Shown here one piece after another: positions 1 through 62,200 of a stretch of 64,000 bases of DNA (positions are counted from its first letter, which is position 1; each line of letters begins with the position of its first letter). This DNA is from Ascidiella aspersa (Eukaryota), in contig OZ004613.1 in assembly GCA_963924565.1 (NCBI GenBank), forward strand, positions 8,928,001 to 8,992,000. The letters are read 5' to 3'. The position numbers were made by a program, and so were the translations under genes. The notes under the pieces are model-generated. The model saw only the letters and a list, made by a program, of their open reading frames with translations. It had not been told where the DNA came from and did not search any database.

Positions 1-212
1 ACTGACATACCGCTGGCATTGGCACCGTAAAGGGAAACATAAAACTGTGGTGTCACCAGCCCATGCTAGATGTGGCACAAAAATCAATTTTAGTGAACAA
101 CGTAATATTTTTTTATTGACGTGAAACCGTTATCCTTCGAAAAACCCTGGAGTGGTTGATATTACAAATGTACAGGCAATATTTTGACTCCGACTCTTTT
201 TTAAACTACAAC

Positions 213-554
213 ACGCTAACTCTTTTAACGCTAACTCTTTTAACGCTAACTCTTTTAACGCTAACTCTTTTAACGCTAACTCTTTTAACGCTAACTCTTT
301 TAACGCTAACTCTTTTAACGCTAACTCTTTTAACGCTAACTCTTTTAACGCTAACTCTTTTAACGCTAACTCTTTTAACGCTAACTCTTTTAACGCTAAC
401 TCTTTTAACGCTAACTCTTTTAACGCTAACTCTTTTAACGCTAACTCTTTCAACGCTAACTCTTTCAACGCTAACCCTTTTAACGCTAATCCTTTTAACG
501 CTAACCCTTTTAACGCTAACCCTTTTAACGCTAACCCTTTTAACGCTAACTCTA
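213..554. repeat. 15-bp minisatellite (ACGCTAACTCTTTTA) x about 23 in the PDX1 intron
   Basis: Directly visible tandem array with a few variant units (CCC, TTC) at the right end. It explains the ALKEL/LTLTL/SVKRV repeat ORFs. Confidence 0.97.
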
Positions 555-782
555 TTACTCTTAAAAACTTTTCTAGCTCCAACTCTTCTAACTCCAATTC
601 TACTAATACATGTATAAATCAGTGGAAATCTGCACATTGCGTCATGCGCACAGTCTAAAAGTGAGCACATTTCAGGGCATTTTTTCGCACATTACGCAAA
701 AAACGCCACGTCCCCTGTTCCCTATATGGTTGCAGTTAGGACAAGTCAGCCAACATATTTGCGTTTCTACAAAAATTCTCAC

Positions 783-1538
783 CCCGGCTTGTTCGGCAAC
801 TCTGGCTTGATCGGCGTTGACAACGTCCATAATGATGCCGCCCTTCATCATCTGGGCGAAGCCGGTTTTTACCTTCAACGTCCCTTAATTTTGACAAAGA
901 GCGTTTAAATATTGAGGGTTTTCTAAATGTTTTTTCGTGCAAAAACTGAGTAAAAACAAAAGTTTATTTGTACGGTTTTTGGCGCTGGTCTAGAATCATA
1001 CCACTTTTTTACAGTAGCGAAACGAGTTTAAAATTTAAATTATGAACTGGGAGAATAAATATATTAATATAATGTTTGACCGACCCAAACCAAAATAATG
1101 TTAGCAACATTAACCCCCAGGACAAAGTGTGGTAGGACGCTAGACCAGTGTCATTTTATCTGATTTAACTTTTGAAGTTTAGTTTAAGAAATAACTAACT
1201 TAGTAGCTTAAAATGAATAGTTACGCCTATCAGCTATTTGAGTAAAGTTTTATACTGTAAGCTTGTAATATTTTATGTATAGTCTTGCGCAACCAGGTTG
1301 TTAAGGTTAAAGCATCCAGTGCAAACTAAACAAAGCGGTTATTAAAACATACAAAACCGTTGAGCATATAATAGCAGCCCCGCCAAAAAAGAACATACGT
1401 CACGGCAAGAAGCATGACAAAGCATTTATCCGGCACAATGCAGTTAAAACTACAGTCGAGACTTTTGTTCTCTCGTACAAAACCAACAATATGAGATATG
1501 GACGCAATTTCCTTACCTGTGGCCTGTTGCTGCTCCAT
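783..1538 (-). CDS. PDX1: Pyridoxal 5'-phosphate synthase subunit PDX1/SNZ/PdxS, coding exons 1-2 (gene continues beyond the left edge)
   Basis: Exon 1 1538-1517 (MEQQQAT+G, donor GTAAGG, phase 1) joins exon 2 883-783 (acceptor AAG, donor GTGAGA, phase 0). Product [41 protein letters not shown] matches the PDX1 N-terminal signature (KxGxAQMxKGGxIMDVxNxxQAxxAExAG). The next expected exon is not in the window. Confidence 0.93.
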
Positions 1539-3675
1539 GTTAGTTATATTTAAACAAAAACAAAAACAAAACGACTGTATAACCTTCATAAAACAGAAAA
1601 GGGTTATAGGGAGCAATGTTGCATTTTATGTTAAGCCATCTTTGACCAGCAGTAAATTATAAAAAAACTATATTATGTTTAAAAATAACATATTAAAGGT
1701 TTAGTAGAAGACTGTGCAGACAACTATTATTTTCATGCTTTATGAATTTATGACCAAGTAAATGTATTACTTTAATCCTGCTCCATTGTACGAACGTTCT
1801 AATTTGAGCAAAATAGAAAACGCTAACTGACTTTTGACATAAAGGCCATTTAAAGTGAAAAATAGAAGGCCTTATGAAACTTTAAGTTGGTTTACGGCAG
1901 CCAAGCGCGATTTCTGAACTATAATCACGAATTTTAAGAACGTATTCTCACAATTTAACTCGATCTACCGCTAAGACAACAAATTTCCCTAAACTTGCGT
2001 GATGACATTGCATTTTAGCTTGCGTAACGAATTTCAGCTGTCAATGAACCTTACCATTGTACACCATTGCGTTTCAGCTTTTGCGTGCTGATTAATTCTT
2101 CTTAATGAACATTACAGTCTTTCACATCTGTTTAAACTATGCTACCTATCTATGTGACTGGCTGATCTGCTGAAGGGCGTATAAATGTGCTTTTACCTTG
2201 CTGTTTCGCCAAATATCGCTTCTGTTGCGTCATGCCTTCTCGAAGGGCGTGTGAAAACCCGCCCACCTACTGTTAGTCTGCAGCTCCAACTCGAGTGGAC
2301 GTCTTACATAAGTGCGCCATGTGTAGCTCAACTGAACTCTTACGGCGTGGTGAGCGCGCTTGACAATTGATCAACTGCTCTGCGGGGCGCTGGTGATTTC
2401 ATCATCAGTCAATTACGCGGCAGGCCTAGTTACGTTGTGCGAGCTGTACGAGTCGGCAACTGGACTCTTAATCAGAACTGTCTGACTTCGCAGCAGCTAA
2501 ATATCGTAACCAAGAAGGCTTTTAGCTATTTGTGCCTCAGAGGCTATTAGCTATTTGTGAAAGTATAGCCTAAAACTGTAGGTTTCACTTCGACTGCAGA
2601 GTATTTTGTTTCGACTTAATAACGCACTTCTTAGGCTCTGTTTGCTTAGCTGACTGTGAGCGGACGGTTTTAAGAAAGAGTATGTTCTGTGCGTTTTTCA
2701 AACCGGATATGCCTACTCACTGGTGCCTATATCAAATAGCACGCCATTCAAGCCTAGACTCCGTGTAGAAACAGTGAATAGCCGATATTTTCAGATTTTC
2801 GCACGAATAGTCCATACTCTGAACAATTAGATTGGTGTTAACTTTGGAACTGATTTTTGTTACTTGAGTGTAGTCAAGAAGAAGAAATGGCACGGCAAAG
2901 GTACATTTTAAGTTGGATTGACGTTCCAATGCTTTACAAACATTATTTTAGAAGATATCAGTAGCCTAAAACATTATTGGAGCATTATTTGAGAAACTAA
3001 AAACCCAATTAAAAGCACGGGTATTTTATAGTACAGATAATATTTGTGAATCGTCAAATATATAAGAATATGTTAGAATTTCGCTCTCTGTGTACACGCC
3101 TTGCACTTTCATGCTTTTAATAAACTTGATTTACAATAGCCATCGGCGCAGAACTATAACACACTCCCAATAATTACAGTAGGACATTTGCCAGTATCCC
3201 ATTGATTTCCCCGGGGAGCAATAGAGATATCAATTGCAAAAAAACGTGTGGAACATGCCATGGGTCCACCAACTGTTTCGTATAATAACGTGAACTTTTA
3301 ATTTTTTTCTCGACTATGGTGAGTATTGTAACTGAACCACGGCCGTCATTTTAAATTTATCAGTGGCAAGAAGGACTAAGTTAGCTATTAGGCAAAACAA
3401 GCACGTGCTTAGTGCACTAAGGAAAGGGAGCGCTACAGAAAGTTTCATAACCGACTTTTTAATAGTGCCTGAGTGTTGAATGAAATATTTTTCTGGTTAA
3501 ACGTATTAGACCTCAATATTGGCCCGTGAAAAAATATTTTTTGTTTATTTGTTGGATATGTCTTGTGTGGTTTATTTTGTTTAAATTTTAAATAACACAT
3601 ATAGGGCAAAATTTTATTCAAGTGTTTAGGCTTAGGGCCTCTAAAAGGCTTGTCCGGCACTGGTGGCAGAAGGAT
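1539..3675. promoter_or_regulatory. Putative shared (bidirectional) promoter region between divergent PDX1 and PDX2
   Basis: Inferred from the head-to-head arrangement of the two start regions. A more GC-rich tract lies at about 2150-2500. No transcription start site can be assigned. Confidence 0.45.
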
Positions 3676-6600
3676 ATGGAAATCGTTACGTGTTAACGTT
3701 ACCCCCGGGATTTCTCTGGGCTCTTAACCTAATAAGTTCCACTTTTTGCAGCGTGAACGTTGGGGTGCTTGCAATACACGGCGGAGTGGTGGAACACTTC
3801 GATTGCCTGAAGAAGGCTGCCGAGCAACTTCAATCGAACGGACATGAGGCCGTCCGCTTTAACGTCTTCAACGTTACCAAACCGGAGCAGGTAAATCTTC
3901 AGTGTTGTAAACTCGTCATTTTGAAATGACTGAAATTCCAGTCAAGTATTTGTTAAATAATTTAAGTCTATGTCAAGTCAATTATAAAAGAACTTAAGTC
4001 CCAGTCAAGTCATAATAGAGCAAGTCAATTTTAAGTCCTTACCGTAAAAAATAAACTAGAAACTATTAAAATTTGTGAATTAGTCCTGCTATGAACCATA
4101 CCCTCTATTAAAAAAATCCATCCTATTGCAAGCAAAATGTTTTACATGCGAAATTTAAGATAAATAACTCAGTTTTGTAATGAAAAGTGCTTAATGAAAA
4201 CAGTTATCTTAACAAACCTGATCTGTTCAAAACACTTACGTCAAGTCAAGTCATTTGAATAGCGTGACTTAAGTGTACAAGTAATTGATTTAAGTCATTA
4301 CAACACTAAATCGTAACGCAAAATATGCATCACTATGACACCTAGATCTGCGATGACTACTTTTACGTTGCGCCTACATGACCTAATAGCTTCCGGAGTG
4401 CTGTTACACATTTAAACGTAAAAATTGACAGTATGTGACCCGGTTTGCCCCTGGCTTGTCTTGTCCCTGCTTTGCATCACAGCAAACGATGTTTAACGTA
4501 TAGGTGAATGACGAACTGGACGGCCTGATTCTTCCCGGAGGCGAGAGCACTGTGCTGACCAAACATCTGAGCAAAAACGGATTTCTTGATCATTTGCGCA
4601 AATGGACGAAGCAGCAAAACAAGGTTTGTGGACTACAGAAAACCCGCGTTTTTATAAAACCTTCTAGTAGCATTTTTATAACCAAATCACGTTTTTGAAT
4701 GTGCCTGTATGTTCGCGGCAAACTTTATCAGCCGTTTGCGTAAAATGAACTGTGATAAACTTCGCGAAATTTATATGTTACATTTCACACAGCTAAAATT
4801 ATTAAATTTGAAAACTAGTTTTTTGGTTACACAGCGAATGGTTGCATTTAAATTTAAAGCTAATAGTTGCATTAAAAACTTTTTTCTAAATTCTATTTGC
4901 CAACATTTAACATACTCTATATGTTGTTTAGTTCACGTGGGGTACGTGTGCAGGATTTATCCTGCTCTCCAATCAAGTTAGCGGGCACGGAAAAGATGCG
5001 GTATCCCTGGTAAGGCTTTCTGTTGTCAAAACAAAATAAAACGCAATTACATATAGAGTCTACAATATGTTTCTGGTATTAGTTCTAGAGTTTTAAAGTT
5101 ACAGTTAAAACACATAAAATATATGAAATATTACCACACAAATTCCTTGGTTTGGGTATCACTTATTTATAAAGGCATATCTCTGTGGTTGGTTATTGTC
5201 GATGATTCTATATTAACTGTAGAATGTGATTCTAAATATAGGCTACATATTAAATGTTTTTTTATTGGCCCCGATTGGACCAACAATGTACAGATGTTCG
5301 TATAACAAACGATGACATCGTGTTGCGTGGCTAACGACCGTACTTAGTTTACAATGCAGTAATAATAGAGATTTCGTCGCTTACGATCACAACAGGTTAT
5401 TTAGAGATGACAGCGAACGGTGACAGTAGCCGTACGCACGTTTGTGTTTGCTTTCGGCCGCTAAATACAGTTGTCATCGAGGCGGGTTCATTATATAACA
5501 TGATTATCACTGGTTAAAAAAAGTGTCACAGTGCCAAATCGCTAAGACACAGAATAAACCATTTCATTCCGACATATATTTCGCCAACTAAGGCATCGTC
5601 AGTATATCTGAATAAAAACAAACGCAACAGTATAAGAGTCTTATACTGTTGCGTTTGTTTTTATTCAGATATACTGACGATGCCTTAGTTGGCGAAATAT
5701 ATATATATCTTTTAAGATCTGGTTAATGTGTCTGACCTGAATTGCTAGCTTTGCTAGATTATTTTGCTGTTACTGATCAGGAATTAAGGTCGACATTTAT
5801 CTTGCGAGGGTCAAGGTGATTTCCATTTTTAACATATTCAGTGCAACATTCATTCCGACATAACGATATTTTGTTGTGCAAAAATTTGCTCTGGTACGTA
5901 TTATGACATAGGTATTCCAGCGATGAGTGACGACAAAAATGCAATATTTTATGCGTTAGATTTGTCGAAATATAGTGGGTGAAGAAATTGAAAGTTTTAC
6001 CTATATATCTTAAACATTCTGCCTAACATGGATTTTGAATGATTGAGATTAAACATATTATTCTAATTCGAGCGTGATGATGAAGTATTTGATCCCGGAT
6101 TTACACAGACTTGGACAACTAGATAATTCTAGTTTTCTAATTCAATGAATAAGAGCAAGGAGCGCCTAATTCTAATTCTAATCTAATTTGTAAATTGCTT
6201 GTGCGCTCTAATTCTAGTTCTAATCTAATTCGGATTTTACCAAAAAATGCTACTTTATCCAACGGCATTTTTAGTCTCTTAGTCAAAAAAAAATTCGAAT
6301 TCCAACTCTTTGGTTGGAACGTAATTTGCACAGTCTGAAAAGCATATGCTATGCTAAAAGGCATCAATATTAGCACACACATATTTACTATTCACTTTCC
6401 TATTAGAATAATTGCGATTTACTGAAACTTATTGTGAATATTCAAATGTAATTCTAGTCCTAATTCTAGTTCAAATTCGTTTTTTTTTAGAATTCGGTAA
6501 TTCTAATTCTAATCTAATTTGAGAAAACCCAAAATGATCTAATTCTAATTCTAATCTAATTGGAAAAAAAATGAAATGCTCTAATTTTAATTCTAATCTA

Positions 6601-8994
6601 ATTTTAAAAAGCTAAAATAAATCTAGTTGTCCAAGTCTGGATTTACAAACGTACTTTTTGACCTTATAATATTGCGCTTTTGTGTCGAAATAAAAAGTGA
6701 TGGATCTGATGTTACGTTGCACTACAAAATTATCACCGGTTGCTAATTACGCCGACTGTGAATTCTAAAATTCATTATTAGTTTTGCGTCTTTGCTTTTA
6801 AATGTAGGGCTATATAGGATTTAGGTTTTCGCATTTCGGGATATATATATAATAACGTAATATTTTTGTGCGCTCTGGTGTTCGCCCGTTTAATTGGACT
6901 CTGGATCTGTTGTTTCCTGTCTCTAAACAATTCTACAAATCTCACGATCATTTATCGCTTGTGTTTCGCCGCGGTTTAACTTCGCACGAAAAGGTCCGCC
7001 CATTGCAATCTTTCCACGAAACGGCCGCCCTGTAAGGCAGGCCTCGGGTTCTCGGGAGCGCGTCGGTTCCCGTGAGAGAGAGTTTTTGTTTAACGTTTAT
7101 TATGAGCGGCTGACCGCTTAGCCCTAGAGAGTAGTAAACGTTTTGGGTGTAGCCTTGTGATATTAAGGGGTAAGACTTTGTGTTATATGCTCTGTCATTC
7201 GGTTGTTTGTAAGTAATTGTGTGTGTCTAGTTGTGATTATTGTTTGTGGTGTGGTAATATTTAACTCTTGCAACCAATACATCTGTACATTGGGTTTTCT
7301 TGTTGTGGTCTTTAATATAAACTCTCTTTGCTAGTTTATTTAATACCCGAAAAATAGGGCTCACTAGCGGCTTTAACGGGAAGCCAAGGTAATTTTCTAA
7401 AATTACTAGTTAAAGTCGTAACATCTGGCATTGTTAACCACTCATTGATTAAAGTTCAATAAAAATAAATGTTATGCTACAACCACTCAGTGATTAAAGT
7501 ACAATGAAAATAAGTTTTATGCTAGAATTAAAACGAAGAGGGTGTTCAATCCCGGATCGGACAAACTTTTTGCTCAAAACATAGGGTTTTTATATCAAAA
7601 TAAAATGCGACCAGCTTGGCATCCTTAACCATCCCTATTTATTAATAAGTAACGGAAACGAACTTTGGACAAGAAAACAATTATAAAAAAAATAAAGGGG
7701 GGAGAGAACTAGAATTTTGACAACTAGATTTTATTTTTTGATTTTTTTAAATTAGATTAGAATTAAAATGAGAGCACTTGTTTTTCAAACTTTTTTTTCA
7801 AATTTTTCAAGGTTTTTCAAAGTTTGTTTAAAATTGAAATTAGAGCATCTATTCCAATTTATATTAGAATATAGAATTACCGAATTCCCAACAACTATAA
7901 ATGAAACCACAATTTAAACCAAAATTACGTTTAATTAATTCACAATCAATTGAGGTTATTTGCTATTGATTCTCATAATATTCAAAATTTAGCTGTTTAG
8001 TTATTGCGACCGAAGAGTATTTAGTTCTTTGTTCAGGATGAGAGACCAAAGTATGCCGTTGGACAAAGTTCAATTTTTTGTAATACCGGAATTAGATTAG
8101 AACTAGAATTAAAGCGCACAAGCAATTCAAAATAGATTAGATTTGGAATTAGCTGCACTTTGTTCTAATCTAATTCGTTAAATGAGACTAGGGTTCACCA
8201 TATTGCGACAGTTTGTGTTGCACATTACAGTTATCGGAACCTTTATGTAAAAAGGTTGGTTACTCTTGCATTAGACAACTGGACTTAAACCAACTCTTTT
8301 CAGGCCAGAATTGTTTTAAACCATCTCGTTTCTAACAAGAATTAAAATAAACCAACTTTTTCGCCAAAATTAAAATAAAACAACTCTTTTCGAACAAGAA
8401 TTAAAATTAACCAACTCTTTTCGAACAAGAATTAAATTAAACCAACTTTCTTTGAACAAGAACTCAGACAAGCCAACTTTTGTCACCAAGAATTAATATT
8501 AACCAACTATTTTCGAACAAGAATTGAAATAAACCAACCCTTTTCGGTCAAGAACTACAATAAACCAATTCTTTTCGGTCAATAACTAAAATAAACCAAC
8601 TCTTTTCGGGCAAGAACAAAAGCTAATCAACTCGCCAACTGTTTAGATCGGCGGATTGGACGTTACCATCGTTCGAAACGCCTTCGGTCGCCAGATCAAC
8701 AGTTTCGAGGGTGAACTGCTGCTGACCGACGCCAACCTGGCCAACTCCGAATCCAAGTTCCAGGGGGTCTTTATCCGGGCGCCCGGCGTCAAATCGGTGG
8801 ACAGCGACGCCGTGTCGGTGCTCTGCCGATTTCCGGACGGCGCCGCCACCAGCGGAACCGGGGAATCCCTGATCAGCGCCGTGGGCGTGCGTCAGGGCAA
8901 CGTCATGGGATGCACCTTTCACCCGGAGCTCACTGAGGACACCAGGTGGCACAAATACTTCTTGGCCGAGGTTTTTCGACTAAAGTACAATTAA
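3676..8994 (+). CDS. PDX2: PLP synthase glutaminase subunit PDX2/SNO/PdxT (class I glutamine amidotransferase)
   Basis: Exons 3752-3890 (VNVGVLAIHGGVVEH...KPEQ), 4504-4623 (DGLILPGGEST), 4932-5009 (WGTCAGFILL, catalytic Cys) and 8647-8994 (IGGLDVTIVRNAFGRQINSFE...VFIRAP...FHPELT, His-Glu). All have GT-AG boundaries and consistent phase 0. The start exon is uncertain: 3676-3689 (MEIV+AC, weak donor GTGTTA) gives the required phase 2, whereas ATG|GTGAGT at 3316-3318 is out of phase. Confidence 0.93.
3900..4307. mobile_element. hAT-like MITE family B (CAGTGTTGTAA...TTACAACACTG termini, internal TCAAG/GACTT motifs) in a PDX2 intron
   Basis: TIR-like ends; near-TSD TAAATCTT / TAAATCGT with the right terminus clipped. 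Related copies or fragments at about 10480-10600, 11200-11608, 19077-19217, 21111, 37757-37945, 44838-45234 and 46735-46905. Confidence 0.7.
5563..5862 (+). mobile_element. Penelope-like retroelement remnant with 5' inversion (129-bp perfect palindrome) flanked by 14-bp direct repeats
   Basis: Direct repeat TTCATTCCGACATA at 5563-5576 and 5849-5862; perfect 64-bp inverted arms 5574-5637 and 5639-5702; contains a minimal hammerhead motif. Confidence 0.65.
5667..5710 (+). ncRNA. Minimal type I hammerhead ribozyme motif
   Basis: Stem I AGATATA/TATATCT, core CTGACGA(T), stem II GCC-ttagtt-GGC, GAAA, palindromic mini stem III ATATAT, predicted cleavage triplet AUA (cut after 5703). Confidence 0.65.
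6106..6639. mobile_element. hAT MITE family A, 534 bp
   Basis: 19-bp TIR CAGACTTGGACAACTAGAT / ATCTAGTTGTCCAAGTCTG; perfect 8-bp TSD GATTTACA (6098-6105, 6640-6647); internal TCTAAT motif repeats. Confidence 0.92.
6710..7423 (+). mobile_element. Probable solo LTR (Gypsy or BEL/Pao type), about 714 bp
   Basis: TGTTACG...CGTAACA termini; 5-bp flanks TCTGA / TCTGG (4 of 5 match); internal TATA-like run at about 6841; GC-rich core followed by a GT-rich tract; no ORF. Confidence 0.55.
7717..8185. mobile_element. Degenerate copy of hAT MITE family A, inverted relative to 6106-6639
   Basis: Shares GACAACTAGAT, GAATTACCGAATTCC, ATGCCGTTGGACAAAGT and AATTAGATTAGAACTAGAATTA blocks with the copy at 53564-54087; termini decayed. 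Confidence 0.7.
8287..8640. repeat. Degenerate minisatellite of about 31 bp (AACCAACTCTTTTCGAACAAGAATTAAAATA), about 11 copies, abutting the last PDX2 splice acceptor
   Basis: Visible recurring AACCAAC...AAGAA units ending just before the TTTAG acceptor at 8642-8646. Confidence 0.85.
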
Positions 8995-11900
8995 GCTTCG
9001 TGAACGCAAACTGCATGGGGTTTTAGATCGTTTTTTTTTTCGATTTTAGGTGAAATTTGCTGCTGCTGCCTGGCATTTCTTTAAGATTAAGCGAGATCTT
9101 CGCAATTTGCGTTTTCTGTCTGAAGTTTTTCTGCCTTTTTGCCTCATTTTTAAACAATTTGCCGCAAAGTTTTATCAAGATACACAACAATAAAGCGTAG
9201 CCCGTGTAGCATAATTAAGCGTGGTGCTGAATTTCTCAATTTGCGGCTCCTGCCTGGGCGTTTTTGCCACGTTTTTAACAATTTCCCGCGAGGTTTTATC
9301 AAAATACGCTAGAAAAGCCGTGGCCGCGTGTGGCACAAGCATGGGGTTAAATTTCCCTTCTTTTTTTTAAATAGTTTCAATTTCCCCTCTGAACGGTTTT
9401 TTGCCATGTTTAGGCAAAAGTTGTTTTTCGTATACTTTTCTCCTAGTTGTGCGTTGTACTAGCAGGGTTTTAATTATCCATTTTATTGCCCTTTTAGTTT
9501 GAATTTGCAATTGCTAGCTAAACATGTTGTTACGGTACGCAGAAGTTTTTATTAATTATTTATTTTTCTTATATACGCGCGTGTCATAGGCGCTAAAATG
9601 AAGAACTAATCTTGTCATTTATATCTGTTTTAGTTAAATTCTGCGACTTCCGCTAATACCTGAACGTTTTACCTCGTTAGGCACAAGTTTTGTTACATCT
9701 TTTTCTCATCGAAAAAGTGTTTGTCGTGTATCGGAAGGTTTTAAATTACATTAAACATGTATTTTATGGTTATTGCCCTGTACGCGCGGTTGTATATGTG
9801 TTTTCTTAAGTATTTAGTTTGTTAGCATTTCTAGTGGAATAATCAAATATAAGACGACGATAGAAAACTATCAATATAATATTGAGTAAATTTCATTTTT
9901 AGATCTATTTTTAACAAATGTCGACATATGCATGCTATACTTCTAATTACTTTTCTTATTTTATAAAACAGTCACCTTAAACAAAACAATAAATTTTAGG
10001 TCCAAGTTTGACATTCCTATTTTGTTATGAAGAAAATTCCAGAAGGGTCATCTTCCAGAACTGTGTAATGTAAACACAATTTTTTTGCTTCGCAACAACT
10101 TTTAAGTTGGTTGTTTTGCGGTTTATTAGGCTGCTCGAAAATACAAAATACAGATAAATAGGGCAACTTATCTTATAGTTAGTGCTTGGTACCACAATAT
10201 TATCTTCTTATTGAGTAAGGACTTGCTTAATAACTCAACAGACCAGCAATATCACGAATTTCTAAGTCGTTTATATAGGTTAACCTTATTCATCTCAAAA
10301 TTGTTGAAAGAAAAAAAGTATGGATTGGCTGATTTGTACTTGTATTAACGTGACGTGGTATTTTGTTTAGATCACTACATTAAATTAAGTGGCTTGTATC
10401 AACTCTGCCCTCTAAAAAACAATTATTGCTCATAGTCGAGTTTACCAAATTTATTGGTTTAATTTTATTCATTTTTATGTCAATGACTTGACTTGTTTTA
10501 ATTTTATGTCAATGACTTGGCTTGAAGTTTACTTGTTCTCATAACGACTTGGCTAGGACTTGAATTAGGGAACTGATGCCTAGGTTTGAAACTTGACTAA
10601 ACGTTAAAGTAAACATAGGATTTTCCTAACTGAGTTGCACATTAAAAAATAATTATCTTCAAACGATAAAGGCGGAAAAAGTTTTAATTAATTTTACCAG
10701 GTTGTAGCCTTTTTTACAAAACCGGCTTCGTTTCTTACACCGATTGAATTTTATGTTTATTTTGCGATAGATTGTTTCTGCGTTAGGCTTTTAAATTAGT
10801 TAATCTTTGCTCAACAAAAATGCAAAGTCAGGTAAAATGTTGCGTATAGTTACTATTATATTTTGCGCGTGTAAATTTGAAAACAATAAATGTTTGTGTT
10901 TTACTACCCAAGCTAGTCTAACATTAATTTTGGAAAAATTTCACTGGAATAATATCGACCTAGTTTGATGTCATTCTTTAATGTCATTCTATACATCGTT
11001 CGTTTTGTGACTCCGCCAATTTGCAACACGATCTGTCTGTGGTAGAACGCGTCATATCCGACCGGGCTTCAGGAAATTGTGCCGCCACTCAATCGAGCTA
11101 TTCTTTATCGTACCAGCTTCCGTTTTTCTCTTTTAGCGCTAAGCACTGGTTATTAATGTCATAAACAACTCATTTGGAACAGATAACAAGGTCCAGTCCA
11201 AATTATCAGTTGTCCAAGTCACAGTAAAGTCATAGTTCAAGTGAACTTCGAGTCAAGTTCTTGTCAAAATATAAAACGTTATGCTTTTAAAATAGCTAAA
11301 CTCGTTCGATTTATGAGCAATAACTCGACTAAAAAAGGACGAAAACCTGACATATAGCAAGCAAATCGTTTTATGCGCAAAAGTTAATCTAAATACACAA
11401 TTTTATAAATCAATTACTTGATAAAATCACTTCGTTTCAACCCAAGTCATTCGTCCAAAACACTTAGTCAAGTCAAGTCATTTGTCTAAATGCAAGGCAA
11501 ATAATTTTGTTTAAAATACTTGAGTCAAACCAATTAAGTCATTTGAAAACAGCGACTTAAGTGCACATAATTTAAGTCAAGTCTTTAACTTAAGTCATTA
11601 CAACACTGATGGTTATTATTTATCTATAAGCCGGTGGTTATAATACAGTGAGCCATTTACTTTAATTTGGTTGGGCAAATAAAATAAACCAGTTGGAACA
11701 AGCAATTTAATTTATGTTATGTGATTTTTGTTAATCCCGTACACCAAAATCACTGTTAGAATTGACGTGCAATTGTTTCTTGTGTTAATTGAATGGCCGT
11801 CGCTCTGTTTTGCAAGATCTAAAAAACACTCAGTAAAACCTAGCTGCAACGAAAACAAGGTTAAATGAGCAGAACTGACCTAGGCGCGTTTCGCCAATTC

Positions 11901-12074
11901 CGTTGGAGTTTTGCATTTACATGCAGCTTATCGTGTTGTTCAATAAACAAAATAAACTCAAATGACCTGATTTACGTACGTGATACAGACACAAATTGCG
12001 GTGTCAAAAGTGTAATAATATTAATGTCGCCGAAATTTAGAGCTCAAAATATGTAATTTTCTAACTGTCTAGCG

Positions 12075-19300: not shown

Positions 19301-22300
19301 ACGTTTTAATTTTTGGCACTTTGATCGTACACAAAAAATTGTATCACGAAGCTTATTGTTAAAGCAACAATTGGAGTCCAAAAGAATTTAAAATATTTCT
19401 CGGCACCCTTATGCGTTAAAAATGGCACCCTAGAGTGCCGCGGCACCCCGGTTGAGAACCACTGCCTGAAATCATTACAGCACTGGACTTGCCTGTCTCG
19501 ACCGGCTTCGGGTCTCAGACGGCTGTAGCATCCTCACGACGATCATGATGTAGCATACCGAGATGATGGCGAAGGGTATCACGAAACCTACCACTGTAGA
19601 AAAAATGAGGAAAGTGTGGAAGGTCTTGGACGTGTTGTGCTTGCACATGACCGTGGTCGACTTGTCGCCTTGCTGCTCCATCGCGCTGTAATCAGGGTAG
19701 TCGAACGGCATTTCACCGGAGGTTTCTGCCAGAAAGCAACGTAAGGGTTAAGACAATCTCAGCTGGTATAGACGTGCTGTTAATTATAACAGTGATTTAT
19801 AACCGCTGTTTATCGTTAACACTTGTGCTCCGTGACAGAATAAAAACCCAATCTGACAGTGAAATAAACTGTTGATGTGTTGTCGATTTTATTGCATGAT
19901 ATTAACTTTCGTTTGGTCTTCCGCAAAATTACTTTTTTTCATGTGTGACTCAAAAGAAAGTAAAAAAAATACTGATTTAGAATACTGTAAGTTAGATGGT
20001 TACTGTCAAAAGACAAATTATAGCCGGATTGACTAAAAAATGCTATAGGTCGTGACTGAGCTTCTTGCTTTGAAATAAAGTCATGTGGCAATGTTGACAA
20101 ACTATAACATAATACAATACCCTTTACAAGAGAGATTTATTTACATAGAAGCGAGGAACACGTTTCTGACAGGACAGAATTACAGGTGATTAGATATTAA
20201 AGGAAATGTGTTAGGTATAGAATATACTAAAGGTGTAGCCAAGGTCGTCTGAAACCGGTGAACTGTTGACAGACCATGAGACCAAGCAATGTCAGCATGA
20301 TCGACACCCAAATGGTATTTTACAGTGTTCTAGTCTAATAGTCCTTAAAATACAAATGTAAAGAACGAAATGCCCCCCTGATTGTTAAAGTGCACTAAAC
20401 CTTTACCTGGCATGTTGGACAGCCTCATAATCTCCTCGAAGCGCTCGCAATCGTAATCGTAAGCCGTTGGAAGCAATGCGCGCGATTCTTCCAACGTAAG
20501 GTCGTCTTTGAATTCTGGGTCTTCAGTGTGGAACATCAGAGCACAAACTCCTGAAAAATCATTGGGATAAGCATTGGGATACCCCTGGGGTCCAACGAGC
20601 AGTCTTTCAGTTTTTTTGTTGATTTGATAAGTTATATTACCAGAAGTTCAATTATGAGAAATTATTTTTTGGCATATTGTGTACAATGAGAATAGTTAAT
20701 AATTGAGCACCGAATAAATGTTAAGGATTTTCGTAACAGCGAATATTTTCCAGCTTTCACTGTTTTGCGAATTAGGCGGTTTCTCCATTATTTAAAGAAA
20801 CTAAAAGAGGTACGCCTGGTTAAAAGGTTTAAGAACTACTCGTCCAGACGCAGGAAAGCTATCGGATTTCTACTTTACCCTATATGCTAGAAGGTCATTA
20901 GATGAGTAAACTTTAAGCTTTTAGATGAGTAAACCAATTCAGCGGCGTATAACGGCAAACAGTTACAGAGCACAGAGGTATCATAGGGCTTAAGGGCTTT
21001 GACGTTAGTATAACATGAGAAAAAGCGCTTGGATTGAGATAACTTTGCTTTAATTCATAGGATATTTATATCTAAAACAGACTTTTCGTTTTTGACTAGC
21101 ACAATATACAAGTGTTGTAATGAATTAAGTCAATGACTTTTAAGTATTTTGCATAAATAACTAGGGTTCAAATAAGATGTTTTAGACTATTTGTTTTAAA
21201 TAATTTTTAGCAACACAAGACTTTGTCTTTAGGCAACAGATTTTTATGGTAAACACACAAACGCGGTCTGGCACTTTAAGTAAATATCGTTAGGCAAACT
21301 TCATTCAGTTCCATCCTATAGTTAAACTTCATGAGACTGTAAAGTGTAAACAGCTCCGTCAAATGAACAAACATTGTTTGTCTGTGCTTGCTCTTTCGAG
21401 TTCAACGAAACTGATGCCAATGTGTGTCTTTCGCATGTTCTCGTCACGTAAATTATTAAGCGAACATAGAAACCCCGTATGTTACATCTCTGTCAATAAA
21501 ACTTTCAGGTGTCTACATTAAACAAGCAAAACAAACCTAATTTGCAGTGTTTGGATCCGGCCAAATGTCACGGATGAGAAATGACTTTTCACCGAGTTGG
21601 CATTTACTCGAAATGGTAAACCAATTTTTTTTGTGAAGAACAGAACAGCGATTGTCAACCATCTTAGTGTCGTTAGAGTTACACATTTTAATCATCGCGT
21701 TTATAAAATTATCAAGATCTTTTTTCGCGGTGCTGTCTTTTAACAGTAGTGTCATTACGCGGTGCTGTCTTTTGGCAGTAGTGTAATTTGTTGCGGTCTA
21801 CGTGATTCTGCTCAACTCCAGCAAAGATTTCGGTTTGGGAGTTTTAAGTGTCAAACTTGAGTGCTGCTGTTTGAATAAACTGCTCCTGTTTCAACAAAAA
21901 ATAAAGCGGAATTGCTGTCGTTTTACTGTAGTAAAATTTCGTGGTGTTGTCGTTTGGGAGTAGTGTCATTTCGCGGAGCTGTCTTTGGGAAATAGTGTAA
22001 TTTGCTGCGGTGTATGTGATTCTGCTCAACTCCAGCAAAGATTTCGGTTTGGGAGTTTTAAGTGTCAAACTTGAGTGCTGCTGTTTGAATAAACTGCTCC
22101 TGTTTATATAAAAAATAAAGCTGAATTGCTGTCGTTTTACTGTAGTAAAATTTCGTGGTGTTGTCGTTTGGGAGTAGTGTCATTTCGCGGAGCTGTCTTT
22201 GGGAAATAGTGTAATTTGCTGCGGTGTATGTGATTCTGCGTATTTCCAGCAAATATTAGGGTTTGGGAGTTTTAAGTGTCAAACTTGAGTGCTGCTGTTT

Positions 22301-49226: not shown

Positions 49227-52200
49227 ATGTCGAGTCGATATTTGGCGTCTTTCTTCAGGAAATACCAACCACTTGCAATATTCACGCAGCGCAACCTGCA
49301 TTGCAATACAAGCAGAAGTATAAGACTGTCGCATCGAAACGATGTTTCATCAAAGGTGAGTACAAATTTTAAAGCACTGACAATTACAATGCAAAAAGAG
49401 AGGAATATTCCATTAAAAGTTATTTAAAAAAAAAATAAAAATTTACCTCAGGAGAGTTCGTATGATTGTATTGCCAATTGACAAACCAGGGCATAGAAGT
49501 AGTTTTCACGCACTGTTCTTAAACAGAATCTCTTAAACAGTGATTCTGAAACAATGTGCTGCGCCACAGAATTGAGCTTTGCGACATTCTTAAATGTACC
49601 GCGCAGCTTTTTGCCATTTTTGTATACGTATTAGTAATAGGTGTGAAACCGTGCATGCAAGTCTTGAATTCACACGACACGTTAGATAACTGATAATATT
49701 ATTGTATTTCCCTATTGCTTTGTCATGTTATAGTGTGGGTATCATCTTATTAAACTTGCAGAATGATGTTTTTTAAGAGAATTTGTTGTGTTACGTTTTT
49801 TTCAGTTATAAGTGTGATGCAATCTGAAAATGTTTGAGAGACGCTGTTCTAAAAGAAGTGCCGTGGATTTAAATTATGGGAATTTAAACGCGTGACGTAA
49901 GATTTTTGTTCAGATGCGTATTACCGGATACGCCTAAACAAACAACACTAAATTTAAACTAATGTAAAAAAAACACAATCTTTTTGTTGTTTTTTATACA
50001 ATAATAAAAACAAAGGACTGCAATAACAACTAACGGAATCTAGTTTATTTCAATAATAATTTAGGGAAATTAAATGGCACAGTATAGGCTATGGTAGTTT
50101 GAACGCACTACTTAGCAGGGACATGTTATCTTCAAAGCAGTGTCTTGATAATCAATAAGCGTCATTCTAAATTACGGCCGAACTAATTTGAGAGAGTGTG
50201 CTATTTTTGCAACAAACTGAAACTTGTGCAATATTGGGCCGTAATATTTTGGCCTGTGAAATCAAACAAATTCGTTGAGCAAATTAGGAAAATGTTCGTT
50301 CAAACTTTGTGACACAATTAAACTTTTCATGCTTTTATGTATATAAAAACAACTGGTTAGGCCTATTTATAAACGACTTATGGTTCTTCTCAATTTAACA
50401 GGCGTTTAGCTCGATTAGCACCGCAATGACGTCATCAACCACTATGAAGGCCGACGGAATAAACTATAACATATCTTTTCCCAAAGGTAAGCTGCGAATT
50501 CAGAAGGTATATCATAAGCAAAAGCTTAAACATACCACATCGAAACTTTTGCCTTAAACATTTTTATTAAAATAATTGAGAAAGATAACATAATTAATTA
50601 TGTACTATGGGAAGCTTACAGCGATAGGTCAACTATTTATTTTCAGGGTGCGGAAATCACGTTCACTCTCTATTGTCACGAACACAATAATGTGCCCGCT
50701 ATGTTAGAATATCAATTTTGTTACAACTTTTAATGTAGAAAAACCTGTAAACATCGCGCCACCTTTGGGCATTGTGACGTAAAACAAACGGTTAGTCGGA
50801 AACAATAACTATATAAGTTTAACTCACATCGGGCAGAATGTTAAACACAACTGTTGGGTACCAATTTGTGGCATCTATAGTCACCTTATTTCCCTCAGTT
50901 CTCCACCTTTTTGTGTTCAACAAACGTGTTTCATTTCACTAAAAAACTAATTGTAACTCGATTAAAATTCCAGAACCAATAAACTCTTCCACAAGTGTTG
51001 TTCTTATGCTGGGTTGGGCTGGTTCAACGCGACGGCAGCTGGATAAGTACGCCGCCATTTACAGCTCGCAAAACTGTGTTGTTATCTCCTACACGCACCC
51101 GGTCGCTACAGTTTACCTGACACGTAAGTTGACTTAAATCAATGGTACTATAAATAACCTAACATAGTATCATTGCTAAAATTGTGTAAAAGTTTCACCT
51201 AAGAAAAAATAGTATCCGAAAGTTGAGTAGTCTGATGATGCTATATCTTTGCTAGGTGCGTTTCAATGTCTGTTAACCGTTTAGACCAGAGTTTAGAAAC
51301 CAAATATATCAGTTGGTCAAGTTCGGTAACTTGATAAACGATACATAATCGACTAAGTCCGAACCTTGTTCAAATCGGAATTTTAAAATTGTCAGATAAG
51401 AGTATCAGTAAAGAGAAACAATATACATATCGAAAAAATTATTGATTGAATACGTAACACCGTCCACAAAGATATAGGACAACGCAAAAGAGAACATAAG
51501 TTGTAATCAAGTTATTCTTAATAAATAACAAACCAAGTACACGTCTCTGTTTTTACTTACCCAAGTCAAGTCACAAACCAACACATTAGGCTTCCATAGC
51601 AGACAGCTCCAAGTTAAGTCACTATACTCACTAGATTTGAAGTACAACAATTAAAACTAAAAAAATGATTAACTTGTTCCATCTCTATAGCATTGTTTTA
51701 TATAGCAGCAGCAGAAAAACAAACAAATGGCTACAAACTGTTTTAACACGTAAAGTGAACGCCAATTTTACTAAACTTGCATTTAATGAAAGTACTAGCC
51801 ATTTCTTGAATTGACCGAAGTCATAAATAGGCCTACTGATTTCACAAATATCAGTGACAGTTGAACGCCAAAAACCATTATTGATAAGCGTAGGTTAAAA
51901 GAGACGTAAACATTGAGTAGCCTATACCTGCGTAAATTCCCTCTGGGACAAATGGACAAAATCATTTTTTATCATTTTTACAAATAGATCCAAACTCTCG
52001 ATGGCATCTCGTGGCTTCGGAGAAGATTGCTGGACTGCTGGAAAAGCACGACCTTGAAACAAATCCGGTCCTCATTCACGTTTTCAGCAATGGCGGATTC
52101 TCGGTCTACCAGCAACTCGCAGAAGTTGTCGAAGTAAGTACAGTTCTTTAAATAGAAAAAATTGATATGGCTTGTTTGAACAAAGTGTGGGCAATTATTT

Positions 52201-55200: not shown

Positions 55201-55654
55201 CCTTGGAACAGTTTTCGCGCCCCTAGTAATCTGAAAGGGGCGGGACACGAACCAAATAAGGATAAGAAGTGCTGCTGAACTCACCTAGTTGTTAAAAGCT
55301 AAATTCATCTAGTTGTTCAAGAAACGTAGTGGGCCAAAAATTATACTCTTCATTATTTAGGTCATTTCGGAATCGCCGGACCAGCGCTGGCCACATCTCT
55401 TTTTGCACTCTGCCGTAGACAAGGTAGCGCCACCTTGCGGCGTGGCCGAAATGGCCGAGAAACGTCGAAGCTCGGGGGCGCCCATGGTGCGTGTTCACGA
55501 CTTCGGGGATTCACCACACGTGCAGCACTTCCGTCATTACCCCGAAGAATACACGAAATACGTTGAGAATTTTTTTGCCGAATGCGTGGATTACAGCAAA
55601 TCTAGAAATGTACCCACTAGTGGCGAAAATCCAGCTGTCGTTGCGGCTTACTGA
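49227..55654 (+). CDS. TMEM53: Transmembrane protein 53 (DUF829, alpha/beta-hydrolase fold), 6 coding exons, about 336 aa
   Basis: Exons 49227-49355, 50402-50486 (internal ATGs at 50426 and 50444), 50974-51123 (LMLGWAGS...LDKYAAIY), 51988-52133 (IHVFSNGG), 54170-54376 (GTVFDSSP) and 55361-55654 (RWPHLFLHSAVD...DFGDSPHVQHFRHYPEEY). All are GT-AG with compatible phases and carry the TMEM53 family motifs. The first exon is less certain. Confidence 0.9.
52663..52737 (-). pseudogene. tRNA-like sequence (pseudogene or tRNA-derived repeat head) in a TMEM53 intron
   Basis: CCCTGCA TA GCTC AGTTGGTA GAGC GA CGGTC CCGGCTT GACCG GAGGTC GTGAG TTCGAAC CTCAC TGCAGGC C. A and B boxes and the cloverleaf are intact and a TTTTT follows, but there is a 1:72 mismatch, C33 instead of U33, and a GGC anticodon. 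Confidence 0.7.
53180..53345. repeat. 24-bp minisatellite (GTTTTTCAAACAGTTTACAATACA), about 7 copies
   Basis: Directly visible. Confidence 0.9.
53564..54087. mobile_element. hAT MITE family A, 524 bp, opposite orientation to 6106-6639
   Basis: Same 19-bp TIRs; perfect 8-bp TSD GTGACATG. Confidence 0.92.
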
Positions 55655-59224: not shown

Positions 59225-62200
59225 CTAACGTTCCGGCAGCTGGCGTAAACAAACTTTAATTTTCTCGACGAGGTCAGCATCAGTTTCTTCTTCTTTTTCA
59301 AGAACTTCTTTGCAACGACTCTTTGCCGCCCCAAAGTGTTCATCCAGATTCCCACTCACCACCGCTCTGGTGTAGTTGTAGCAAGCCCAGGCGTACAAGT
59401 TGGTCGACTGGGCAATTCCAGCCTCCAGGGCTTCAACGAAACATTTCGCGGCGTCTTGGTACTTGCCCTTGCAGGCCAGATACTTGCCACAATACACAAG
59501 GCACTTGGGCGCCATAATCCAAGCAATATTGTCGCTGGCAAGTCGATAGAGTTGGTCGTGCACTTTGTCCCCCTGAGCGACGGACTCCGGGTCTGGCCGC
59601 CCCTCCAAAGCCATAAGCTTAGTGTTCACGCGGATCAGAAAGCGGCGGAGGATCATTCGGTCATAGACGGCGCCCTCTGTCTCCTTGACATGGCCGTGTT
59701 CGTAGAAATCGACCTTCTCGTCTTCGCCTGACTCCATCAGTCGCTGCAGCAAGGATTTGGCCTCGGTTAGAGTCGCCTTCTTTTCCTCGCTCGGGCGACC
59801 GTTGAGCGCCTTCAGCATGATCGGTACCAAGCTGATGGTGGTCAAACGCTCAAACAGGATTCTCAGCTCGGTGTTCTTGCCTGACTCCAGGGCGACGGCG
59901 TGCGCCAACTTAGAGTACCACTCGTACTTGCGGCGCATTGCGGCGGTCACAGGTACGTTGTAGTAGAGCAGCACGCGCCCGAACGTGTGTAGGATGGACG
60001 AGAGGCGCTCAGCGAAGAACATGCTACAGTGAGACTTGCGATCCAGGAAAGCGCCCTGACACCCCCTGAATCCGCACATAAGCGACGAAGTAAGGCCCAC
60101 GCGGGTTTCGCTCGCCTCTTTGGCACTCGAGAAAAGGGCGTGGTCGCTGTTGGCGGCCCGCGATTGGAGGAAATCGATTTCGGTCGACTTCATTTGCAGC
60201 ACCAGCGCCATGTAGTTGTCTATCGTTCCTTCGGGAAGCTCGCGAAATAAGGTTTCGCCCGCTTTGGTGCAATTACTGACGATGTCCCGTGCTGTTTCGT
60301 CCGGGTTATCGCTTGGAGTGAAGACTTTTGCGGCTTCGATGCCCTTATCTTTCACCAGAGAGTTGACCATGTCCAAAATGAGCGTCGCCGCCGAGGTAAG
60401 GCACTCTTCCGCGAAAGATTTCGATGAAAAGACGCCGAGGCTCTTCACGATTCCTAACACCTCGAGCAGATGGCACGTGCACATTTGTATGACAAACTGC
60501 TCGGAAGACAGGGTTCCGTGGGTGCCAGAAAGATCGAAGCTCTTTTTCAGGTGCGGCAGCAACGTTTCAATCTGGCTGGAGATCTTATTCATGAAAATGT
60601 TGTCTTGTGATTTCCTAAGGTCCTTGTGTACGATGCCGCTGAGGGAATAAAGCGCCGTTTTCAGCTGTTCTGTGTAATGGTCACTTTGCTCTTTGTCGTT
60701 GAGTTTGAGCATAACGCGGACAGCGCGGAACACAACCTCGTGGAAAGTGACTGTGGTGCGCAAGTATCCCGATCCGTCGATCTTACATATTCCATAGTTT
60801 TCCAGGTGTGTGATGACGTTGCCCGACGACGCCTTGTTTAGCGTAGCCGTTCGCCTGACGTCATCCCTGAACTTGGTGCGCTGTTGTTGGGCGACCCTAG
60901 CAACCAACAGCTGGGGCAGCTGGCCGTGGTGAAAGAAGCTCAACACGTTTACAACGCGCCAGATCTGCTGGTAAATCTCGTCGTCTTCCGGCTTTGATTG
61001 CAGCAGAAGGACGATCGATCGGAAGAGATGCATGAAGTTGCCGCCGTATTCCTCTCTTAAGTGATGCGCCTCCATCTCCTGCACCTCAGCTTCGAGCCGA
61101 TTGTCGCGCAGAAACTCCAAGTATTCGGTGTAGGTGCTGCGCGAGTTGACGCAGTTTGCCTTTACTGCAACCAAGCCGAGAGGCGAGCGGCTGTTCAGCT
61201 CTATTATCTTCAGTCCAGCTTCCCGCTCCTCTCTTTCCGGTTCGTTGTCGCCTCCGAAGAGCATCTCAAGTCCTTCTTCGTCTGTGAATCCGTCCACTTG
61301 AAAGCTTTTGTAGCAACGAAGTCCCTGTTTGAGTTGGGCGCTCGGCATTGACACCGAGTTTTTCCTTGAGGTAAGATAAAGGTGAAACTTGCAAGAAGGC
61401 TCGCCAACATTGAGGCCGTTGACTTGAGTCAACAAGTCACTCAACATCTCTTGCCGTACCGACTTTTGCGGATCCTCTATAAGTATCAGGATTGGGATGG
61501 CGAGACCACTCAACATAGTCATTAACGGCTTGGTTTTTCCACGTTTCAGCTCGTTTTCGACGCTGCGGTAATCACAAAGTAGAATATTGTTTTCTTTTAG
61601 GGCAATCAACATGTTTACCAGCTCGGTTTCGATGTCGTGGTTGTTGTCGTCGCACTGCACGTGCCATTTGGCATAAAGACCGGCACTGCTACCAGCACTT
61701 GTGTAAGGGAATTCGGAGGCGACCGTTCTGATTATTTCCGATTTGCCAGTCCCGGGAAAACCGTGCACGTGTAGTATGCATACCGTTTCTTTCCTTGCCA
61801 CGTCCGCTATTTCTTTGTATTTAACAGTCGAAATAAAGTTTGGTCTGGCTGTCAACGTGTTGTCGACTGGACGCGGATCGAGTTTGGGCTTTTTGGCATC
61901 TGGTCCTTCCATGATTCCTAAGAGAAAAAAAGTTGAGTTGCAGACATTTGTATTCTAAATACATTCTTTTGGCGTATGGACAAATATGTTACGGTTTAAA
62001 CTTTAAAGACATAACACTAAATACGCAGTATATGTTTCGCTTTTACAATCGCATAGGAATATCAAGCTGCACTGTTGTGGTCTGGATATCTATAAATTGT
62101 GATATGAAGTTAAATCATAACTGCTAAAACGCAGTCTCTAACCGTCTCAATTTGTTTTTATAGTGAAACTATATTTTGGGTGTTTTTCTGTAATTTGAAC

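What the first reader, a model, noticed from the sequence alone, without database searches (positions are those of the whole stretch)
783..8994. Head-to-head PDX1/PDX2 pair: a de novo vitamin B6 synthase locus in an animal genome
Seen: intron-containing PDX1 (-) and PDX2 (+) diverge from a spacer of about 2 kb, next to a class A peptide GPCR gene and among typical animal repeats. PDX2 keeps PGGEST, GTCAG and FHPEL. Known: PDX1 plus PDX2 form the DXP-independent PLP synthase of fungi, plants, apicomplexans, archaea and many bacteria. Vertebrates, insects and nematodes lack it, and homologues are reported from only some invertebrates. Yeast SNZ/SNO genes are likewise divergent pairs. Inference: this animal may make its own B6 and co-regulate both subunits from one promoter, through either ancient conserved linkage or re-created/transferred clustering. 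Multiple introns with host-type MITEs argue against bacterial contamination.
Basis: partly seen in the sequence, partly recalled or inferred. Interest (0 to 1): 0.85.

Follow-up and report, generated by a model that had tools for sequence, protein, structure and literature searches.

The report
Head-to-head vitamin B6 synthase genes

Summary
PDX1 (- strand) and PDX2 (+ strand) diverge from a 2,868-bp spacer on a 31.7-Mb contig. Each gene is single-copy in the 308-Mb genome.

I recovered the rest of PDX1 to the left of the window. It has 8 conserved GT-AG exons encoding 291 aa and no stops. PDX2 has 4 conserved exons encoding 228 aa. Both keep almost every column that is conserved across about 190 homologues, including the catalytic motifs.

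The first conserved exon of each gene starts at a splice acceptor with no in-frame ATG. Each gene therefore needs a small ATG exon inside the spacer, and the true intergenic region is shorter than it looks (candidates give 0.2-1.35 kb).

Trees put both proteins with the tunicate Clavelina, inside an animal clade. An AU test rejects grouping PDX1 with prokaryotes (p = 0.0002). Prokaryotic loci show pdxS followed by pdxT on one strand and never head-to-head.

The find is not new. NCBI already names these genes in many cnidarians, molluscs, annelids, a copepod and a tunicate. A 2010 gene-order survey lists the divergent SNO/SNZ pair in Ciona intestinalis, Dictyostelium and fungi.

The parts
783..883 (-). 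PDX1 first conserved coding exon ([20 protein letters not shown]...AEQAG). It is an internal exon: acceptor ttaag|GG, donor GTGAGA. The seven further exons lie left of the window at G000:C7 8926950-8927030, 8925961-8926081, 8925291-8925421, 8923723-8923845, 8923159-8923234, 8921509-8921687 and 8920607-8920669 (the last includes the stop).
   Evidence: Pfam SOR_SNZ E 7e-11; genome scan; splice model with all GT-AG introns and a 291-aa open frame.
1517..1538 (-). Best candidate for the coding part of the PDX1 start exon: ATG plus 7 codons plus 1 nt (MEQQQAT, then a split Gly codon), donor ACAG|GTAAGG. This is inferred, not shown.
   Evidence: Phase-compatible ATG/donor scan; sequence. The N-terminus it would give resembles those of the closest homologues (MEHQTG..., METKTG..., MGDVKTG...), and the alignment offset of 6-7 residues fits.
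884..3751 (.). Region between the first conserved exons. It must hold both start exons and the promoter or promoters. Dispersed host repeats lie at about 950-1160 and 3358-3663. The middle is single-copy, with a GC peak (0.52-0.54) at 2200-2500.
   Evidence: There is no ORF of 100 aa or more and no Rfam family at gathering score.
1750..1757 (+). Candidate A for the PDX2 start exon, coding part (ATG ACC AA|gtaaat, giving MTN-VNVGVLA...). It would put the two ATGs 211 bp apart. Inferred.
2887..2900 (+). Candidate B for the PDX2 start exon, coding part (ATG GCA CGG CAA AG|gtacat, giving MARQS-VNVGVLA...). It would put the two ATGs about 1.35 kb apart, around the GC peak. Inferred.
3752..3890 (+). 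PDX2 first conserved exon (VNVGVLAIHGG...KPEQ). Acceptor tttttgcag|C, phase 2, with no in-frame ATG.
4504..4623 (+). PDX2 exon carrying DGLILPGGESTV.
   Evidence: Pfam SNO E 1e-7.
4932..5009 (+). PDX2 exon carrying the nucleophile motif FTWGTCAGFILLS.
8647..8994 (+). PDX2 last exon (IGGLDVT...RNAFGRQ...FIRAP...FHPELT...), with stop TAA at 8992-8994.
   Evidence: Pfam SNO E 2e-21; PDB PdxT chains at E 1e-14.
19478..19747 (-). Exon of the neighbouring class A GPCR gene (TM4-TM5 region). It is context only and not part of the B6 locus.
   Evidence: Pfam 7tm_1, 31 bits against a cut-off of 30.5.

Best explanation
The locus holds the two single-copy nuclear genes of the DXP-independent PLP (vitamin B6) synthase of a probable tunicate. 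PDX1 is the synthase subunit, which builds PLP from ribose 5-phosphate, glyceraldehyde 3-phosphate and ammonia. PDX2 is the glutaminase subunit, which supplies the ammonia. Both genes were inherited vertically within animals and look intact. They sit in the divergent (head-to-head) order also recorded for Ciona, Dictyostelium and fungi. Each gene has a short ATG-bearing first exon inside the 2.9-kb spacer, so the two start sites probably flank a shared promoter region of at most about 1.4 kb that helps keep the two subunits in step.

Shown here: gene structure, intactness, conservation, animal/tunicate ancestry, orientation and single-copy status.
Inferred: enzymatic activity, the exact first exons, and co-regulation.
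For: - Pfam hits lie above the cut-offs, and the assembly has a single locus for each family.
- The models are complete and stop-free, and every intron between the modelled exons is GT-AG.
- PDX1 keeps 132 of 133 columns that are at least 95% conserved in 192 homologues. PDX2 keeps 36 of 38 columns that are at least 90% conserved in 186 homologues. The motifs MDV, PVMAK, DESE, RTKGE, PGGEST, GTCAG and FHPE are all present.
- PDX1 tree: the window groups with tunicate Clavelina (SH-aLRT 93), inside a starred clade (96) that holds every named animal and no prokaryote.
- An AU test rejects window plus prokaryotes as one group (p = 0.0002, lnL difference 125.6).
- PDX2 tree: the window sits in a starred clade (98) with Clavelina, next to annelid and mollusc sequences.
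- In 80 of the 145 prokaryotic and metagenome loci with a full PDX1 frame, pdxT lies just downstream on the same strand (median gap 27 nt). None is head-to-head.
- The introns and the spacer carry repeats that are dispersed over this genome.
- The divergent SNO|SOR_SNZ pair is tabulated for Ciona intestinalis, Dictyostelium and fungi (PMC2871058).
- PDX1 and PDX2 sit on contigs of identical length in Clavelina (20,453,238 bp) and in Owenia (37,288,061 bp).
Against:
- Neither start codon was identified with certainty. The first conserved exon of each gene has no in-frame ATG, and several phase-compatible candidate first exons exist.
- The spacer contains repeats and could hold two separate promoters.
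- The trees are 'quick' IQ-TREE runs, and the AU group was named after the tree had been seen.
Confidence: 0.8

Rival explanations
1. The two genes are functional, but the head-to-head order has no regulatory meaning. Each gene would have its own promoter in the 2.9-kb spacer, and the order would be either a passive leftover or independently re-created in this lineage.
For: The spacer is long for a classical bidirectional promoter and holds two dispersed repeats. One candidate pair of first exons leaves about 1.35 kb between the ATGs. From general knowledge, PDX1 and PDX2 are unlinked in plants and Plasmodium and still work.
Against: The same divergent order occurs in Ciona, Dictyostelium and nine fungi, which is hard to explain without constraint. 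The other candidate pair of first exons leaves only 211 bp between the ATGs. The two subunits form a complex with fixed proportions (general knowledge of PdxS/PdxT).
Confidence: 0.12
2. One or both genes are unexpressed relics (young pseudogenes) that have lost their start exons.
For: No in-frame ATG precedes the conserved N-terminal residues in either gene. No RNA data are available.
Against: There is no stop or frameshift in 12 conserved exons, and every intron between them has GT-AG splice sites. 132 of 133 and 36 of 38 strongly conserved columns are kept. A phase-compatible ATG exon with a strong donor gives an N-terminus like that of the closest homologues. Both first conserved exons start at good acceptors.
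Confidence: 0.06
3. The pair is bacterial contamination, or a recent horizontal transfer of a pdxST operon.
For: PDX1 is 63-79% identical to prokaryotic PdxS. This reflects the family's extreme conservation.
Against: The locus lies on a 31.7-Mb contig and has spliceosomal introns containing host repeats. Both trees place the proteins among animals, and the AU test gives p = 0.0002 against a prokaryotic grouping. Prokaryotic loci are co-directional operons and never divergent.
Confidence: 0.02

Closest known systems
Yeast SNZ1/SNO1 (and SNZ2/3-SNO2/3) and other fungal divergent SNZ-SNO pairs
   Same: Same two protein families (PF01680, PF01174) and the same head-to-head order. PMC2871058 lists them as a conserved divergent pair.
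   Different: The fungal pairs are compact, with short intergenic regions. Here there are at least 9 and at least 5 exons, introns up to 3.6 kb, and up to 2.9 kb between the first conserved exons.
Ciona intestinalis SNO/SOR_SNZ divergent neighbour pair
   Same: Also a tunicate, with the same families and the same divergent orientation. It is recorded in the Pfam-based gene-pair table of PMC2871058 (supplementary file 4).
   Different: A different species. The published entry is only a table row with no gene models. I could not fetch the Ciona locus to compare intron positions or spacer length.
Suberites domuncula SNZERR / SNO genes (Seack et al. 2001, PMID 11470156)
   Same: The first animal (sponge) SNZ and SNO genes, with gene structure and promoter activity studied. 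NCBI names animal PDX1 proteins 'SNZERR-like' after it. It is cited as evidence that some sponges have the pathway (PMC7954711).
   Different: The paper is not held in the library. My recollection that it describes a head-to-head pair with a shared promoter is from memory and was not checked.
Bacterial and archaeal pdxS-pdxT operon
   Same: Same enzyme; PDX1 is 63-79% identical.
   Different: The prokaryotic genes are co-directional, with pdxT a median of 27 nt downstream, and have no introns. The window's proteins do not group with prokaryotes.

Membership tests
PDX1 / PdxS / SNZ (Pfam PF01680 SOR_SNZ) | Profile match above the curated cut-off over the whole (beta/alpha)8 domain | tested here: met
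   Five exons match profile positions 2-187 of 207, each above 27 bits. The joined model aligns end to end with full-length homologues at about 80% identity.
PDX1 / PdxS / SNZ (Pfam PF01680 SOR_SNZ) | Catalytic lysines (the PVMAK Schiff-base lysine and the RTKGE lysine) and the MDV and DESE acidic residues (residue roles from established PdxS biochemistry) | tested here: met
   All four motifs are present at model positions 19, 73, 98 and 143. 132 of 133 columns that are at least 95% conserved are kept.
PDX1 / PdxS / SNZ (Pfam PF01680 SOR_SNZ) | PLP formation from R5P, G3P and ammonia or glutamine | not testable with these tools
   This needs an enzyme assay or complementation.
PDX2 / PdxT / SNO (Pfam PF01174) | Profile match above the curated cut-off | tested here: met
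   77.4 and 32.2 bits against a cut-off of 27. PDB PdxT/Pdx2 chains match at E 1e-14 to 1e-9.
PDX2 / PdxT / SNO (Pfam PF01174) | Class I glutaminase triad: Cys in GTCAG, His and Glu in FHPE; plus the PGGEST loop | tested here: met
   The motifs are present at model positions 91, 204 and 58. 36 of 38 columns that are at least 90% conserved are kept.
PDX2 / PdxT / SNO (Pfam PF01174) | Complex formation with PDX1 and glutaminase activation | not tested
   The spliced models have no reference and so could not be given to complex prediction. No job was sent.
Conserved divergent SNZ/SNO gene pair with shared promoter | The two genes are adjacent, on opposite strands, with their 5' ends facing | tested here: met
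   PDX1 is on the - strand ending at window 883, and PDX2 is on the + strand from 3752. The spacer has no ORF of 100 aa or more and no Rfam family.
Conserved divergent SNZ/SNO gene pair with shared promoter | Bidirectional promoter and co-expression | not testable with these tools
The first exons are only candidates.
Conserved divergent SNZ/SNO gene pair with shared promoter | The same arrangement in related animals | tested here: inconclusive
   The literature table lists Ciona intestinalis.

The most novel reading that the evidence does not exclude
The divergent PDX1-PDX2 pair may be one unbroken piece of micro-synteny, inherited from the common ancestor of Amoebozoa, fungi and animals down to a chordate. 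That would make it one of the oldest bidirectional gene pairs outside the histones. In tunicates it would be organised around two ATG-only mini first exons that flank a core of 0.2-1.35 kb. Loss of the whole locus would then have happened on the vertebrate stem, after the split from tunicates.
Probability: 0.45. Interest if true: 0.4.

Novelty: already known. Interest (0 to 1): 0.22.

Why it matters
The locus is a clean example that 'animals cannot make vitamin B6' holds only for some lineages (vertebrates, insects, nematodes). A chordate relative still carries the whole two-gene synthase. The back-to-back order looks like a very old, selectively kept arrangement. This is useful for teaching, for annotation (the tiny first exons are easy to miss) and for dating the vertebrate loss. 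It does not open a new question, because the genes are already annotated across invertebrates and the divergent pair is already tabulated for Ciona.

Tried and rejected
- The search for homologous proteins with a Clostridium PdxS scaffold plus window exons (A2) returned only Clostridium relatives and was wasted. The metatranscriptome contig L091 worked as a query instead.
- A profile of animal PDX2 proteins (A3) returned mostly bacterial, fungal and plant PdxT. These served only as outgroups.
- MAFFT misplaced short exon fragments against a full-length scaffold (A1), so A1 was discarded.
- The ESM Atlas search with the NB-ARC-TPR ORF, tried to identify the organism, gave only bacterial-labelled clusters and no help.
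- Paper searches for 'SNZERR', for 'Suberites' with 'bidirectional promoter', and for 'pyridoxine biosynthesis' with 'Ciona' found nothing. Seack 2001 is not held.
- The sigma-70 promoter and terminator scan of the spacer was no better than shuffles and is irrelevant for a eukaryote.
- Translation starting at the internal MMKGG methionine of PDX1, and SL trans-splicing directly onto the first conserved exons, were both considered and judged unlikely. The in-frame residues upstream of that Met match the family profile and the homologues. PDX2 exons 2-3 contain no Met at all.
- The joined (spliced) protein models were never sent to any search, fold or complex tool. Searches were done exon by exon, by reference. 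The joined models were assembled only inside scripts, from the held files, for alignments, conservation counts and trees.
Full report
**1. What is there**

The window is G000:C7:8928001-8992000, on a 31.7-Mb contig of a 308.6-Mb assembly.

Pfam SOR_SNZ matches the - strand frame at window 672-878 (E 7e-11). Pfam SNO matches + strand frames at 4504-4698 and 8656-8994 (E 1e-7 and 2e-21). A six-frame scan of the whole assembly finds each family at this locus only. For PDX1 it adds four exons just left of the window.

I fetched the 20 kb to the left (L008, L009) and built splice models from the sequence.

- PDX1 has eight conserved exons. One lies at window 783-883. The other seven lie at C7 8926950-8927030, 8925961-8926081, 8925291-8925421, 8923723-8923845, 8923159-8923234, 8921509-8921687 and 8920607-8920669.
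- Every intron between these exons is GT-AG. Together the exons give 291 residues with no stop, ending ...MVGINCDDMKVKFAEREAKRN.
- PDX2 has four conserved exons (3752-3890, 4504-4623, 4932-5009, 8647-8994), with GT-AG introns between them, giving 228 residues.
They are present and intact.

**2. A correction to the anatomy**

The first recognisable exon of each gene starts at an AG acceptor: ttaag|GG for PDX1 and tttttgcag|C for PDX2. Neither has an in-frame ATG upstream. A stop codon directly precedes the PDX1 frame, and PDX2 exons 2 and 3 contain no Met at all.

The in-frame residues before the first Met of PDX1 ([10 protein letters not shown]) match the Pfam profile and the closest homologues. 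They are therefore coding.

Each gene must therefore have a short ATG exon inside the 2,868-bp 'spacer'. A scan for phase-compatible ATG and donor pairs gave these candidates.

- PDX1: a strong candidate at window 1538-1517 (-), with donor ACAG|GTAAGG. It would give [13 protein letters not shown]... The closest homologues begin MEHQTGSFVVK..., METKTGTVVVK... and MGDVKTGSFTVK..., and the alignment offset of 6-7 residues fits.
- PDX2: two candidates of equal weight, at 1750-1757 and at 2887-2900.
- The ATG-to-ATG distance would be 211 bp or about 1.35 kb. The second option brackets a GC peak at 2200-2500.

These first exons are inferred, not shown.

The spacer also holds two dispersed host repeats, at about 950-1160 and 3358-3663, with copies on contigs C1-C9. 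Under this model both would be intronic.

**3. Are the genes functional?**

- PDX1 keeps 132 of the 133 alignment columns that are at least 95% conserved among 192 homologues. The one difference is Leu to Ile.
- PDX2 keeps 36 of 38 columns that are at least 90% conserved among 186 homologues.
- The motifs known from PdxS/PdxT biochemistry are all present. For PDX1 these are MDV, PVMAK, DESE and RTKGE. For PDX2 they are PGGEST, GTCAG and FHPE. Their roles are established knowledge.
- The last PDX2 exon aligns with solved PdxT/Pdx2 chains at E 1e-14 to 1e-9.

This is the pattern of genes under purifying selection. Enzyme activity itself is inferred.

**4. Whose genes are they?**

The last PDX2 exon, searched against 1.84 billion cluster representatives, has no hit above 57% identity. 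The named best hits are animals: Clavelina lepadiformis (tunicate), Argonauta hians (cephalopod) and Owenia fusiformis (annelid). Later look-ups added Xenia (octocoral) and Tigriopus (copepod).

For PDX1 I used a full-length metatranscriptome relative (L091) as the query. Its named hits are 'pyridoxal 5'-phosphate synthase subunit SNZERR-like' or 'PdxS-like' proteins from many cnidarians, molluscs and annelids, and from Clavelina.

Trees (IQ-TREE quick, LG+C20+F+G4):
- PDX1 groups with Clavelina and three unnamed sequences (SH-aLRT 93). That group sits inside a starred clade (96) holding all named animals and none of the 24 prokaryotic rows.
- Holding the window together with the prokaryotes costs 125.6 lnL units and is rejected (p-AU 0.0002). 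One caveat: the group was named after the tree had been seen.
- PDX2 falls in a starred clade (98) with Clavelina, next to annelid and mollusc rows and apart from fungi, plants and bacteria.

Notes from other agents on this genome call it a sea squirt. My two trees agree with that.

Contamination and recent bacterial transfer are effectively excluded. The evidence is the introns, the host repeats, the trees and gene order: pdxT follows pdxS on the same strand (median gap 27 nt) in 80 of the 145 prokaryotic and metagenome loci with a full PDX1 frame, and none is divergent.

**5. Is it new?**

No.
- The pathway in animals has been in the literature since the sponge work of Seack et al. 2001. That paper is cited in PMC7954711, but it is not held here.
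- Public annotation shows both genes in many invertebrate phyla.
- The head-to-head order is also on record. Davila Lopez et al. 2010 (PMC2871058) list SNZ1/SNO1 among the most conserved divergent pairs. Their Pfam-based table names Ciona intestinalis and Dictyostelium discoideum beside nine fungi.
- In Clavelina and in Owenia, the two genes lie on contigs of identical length (20,453,238 and 37,288,061 bp). This fits linkage but does not prove adjacency.

**6. Mechanism**

PDX2 hydrolyses glutamine, and the ammonia passes to PDX1. PDX1 condenses it with ribose 5-phosphate and glyceraldehyde 3-phosphate into PLP. This is established for PdxS/PdxT and Pdx1/Pdx2.

The divergent order around a short central region most likely lets one regulatory region drive both subunits in step. 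This part is inferred from orientation, and from the persistence of the same order in Ciona, Dictyostelium and fungi.

**7. What could not be done**

Expression, start sites and the first exons remain untested.
- The spliced models were not sent to any search, fold or complex tool. Searches were made exon by exon, by reference. The joined models exist only inside scripts, built from the held files for alignments, counts and trees.

**8. Verdict**

The locus is real, well preserved and vertically inherited. It is a tunicate PLP-synthase locus in the known divergent SNZ/SNO arrangement, and it counts as already known. The only small additions are the complete gene models and the observation that both genes need tiny ATG first exons inside the apparent spacer.

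Noticed in passing
window 5574-5702: A perfect 129-bp palindrome (64-nt arms, 100% complementary, 1 nt between them) inside PDX2 intron 4. Another note of this scan calls it a hammerhead carrier. Rfam at gathering score found no family anywhere in window 1-12000.
   Followed up: partly
window 213-557: A 15-nt tandem repeat, 23 copies at 97% match, in the PDX1 intron just downstream of the exon at 783-883. It produces long spurious ORFs on both strands.
   Followed up: no
window 8286-8616: A 31-nt tandem array (about 11 copies, 77% match) ends about 30 bp before the acceptor of the last PDX2 exon.
   Followed up: no
P0156 / P0005 (Clavelina lepadiformis PdxT-like isoforms X1 and X3): The public Clavelina PDX2 models lack the normal N-terminal strand (MxxGVLAxQG) that other homologues have, and start with unrelated residues. 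The short 5' exons may have been missed in automatic annotation, the same difficulty met here.
   Followed up: no
window 51936-52148 and 55361-55651 (+): Exons of a DUF829 (PF05705) gene, E 9e-6 and 3e-13.
   Followed up: no
window 59225-61912 (-): An 895-aa single-exon ORF. Its nearest ESM Atlas clusters are NB-ARC/TPR STAND NTPases labelled bacterial. It is the subject of other notes of this scan.
   Followed up: partly
P0082 (Tigriopus californicus): A copepod carries a PdxT-like gene on a 16.5-Mb contig, so arthropods do not all lack the pathway.
   Followed up: no
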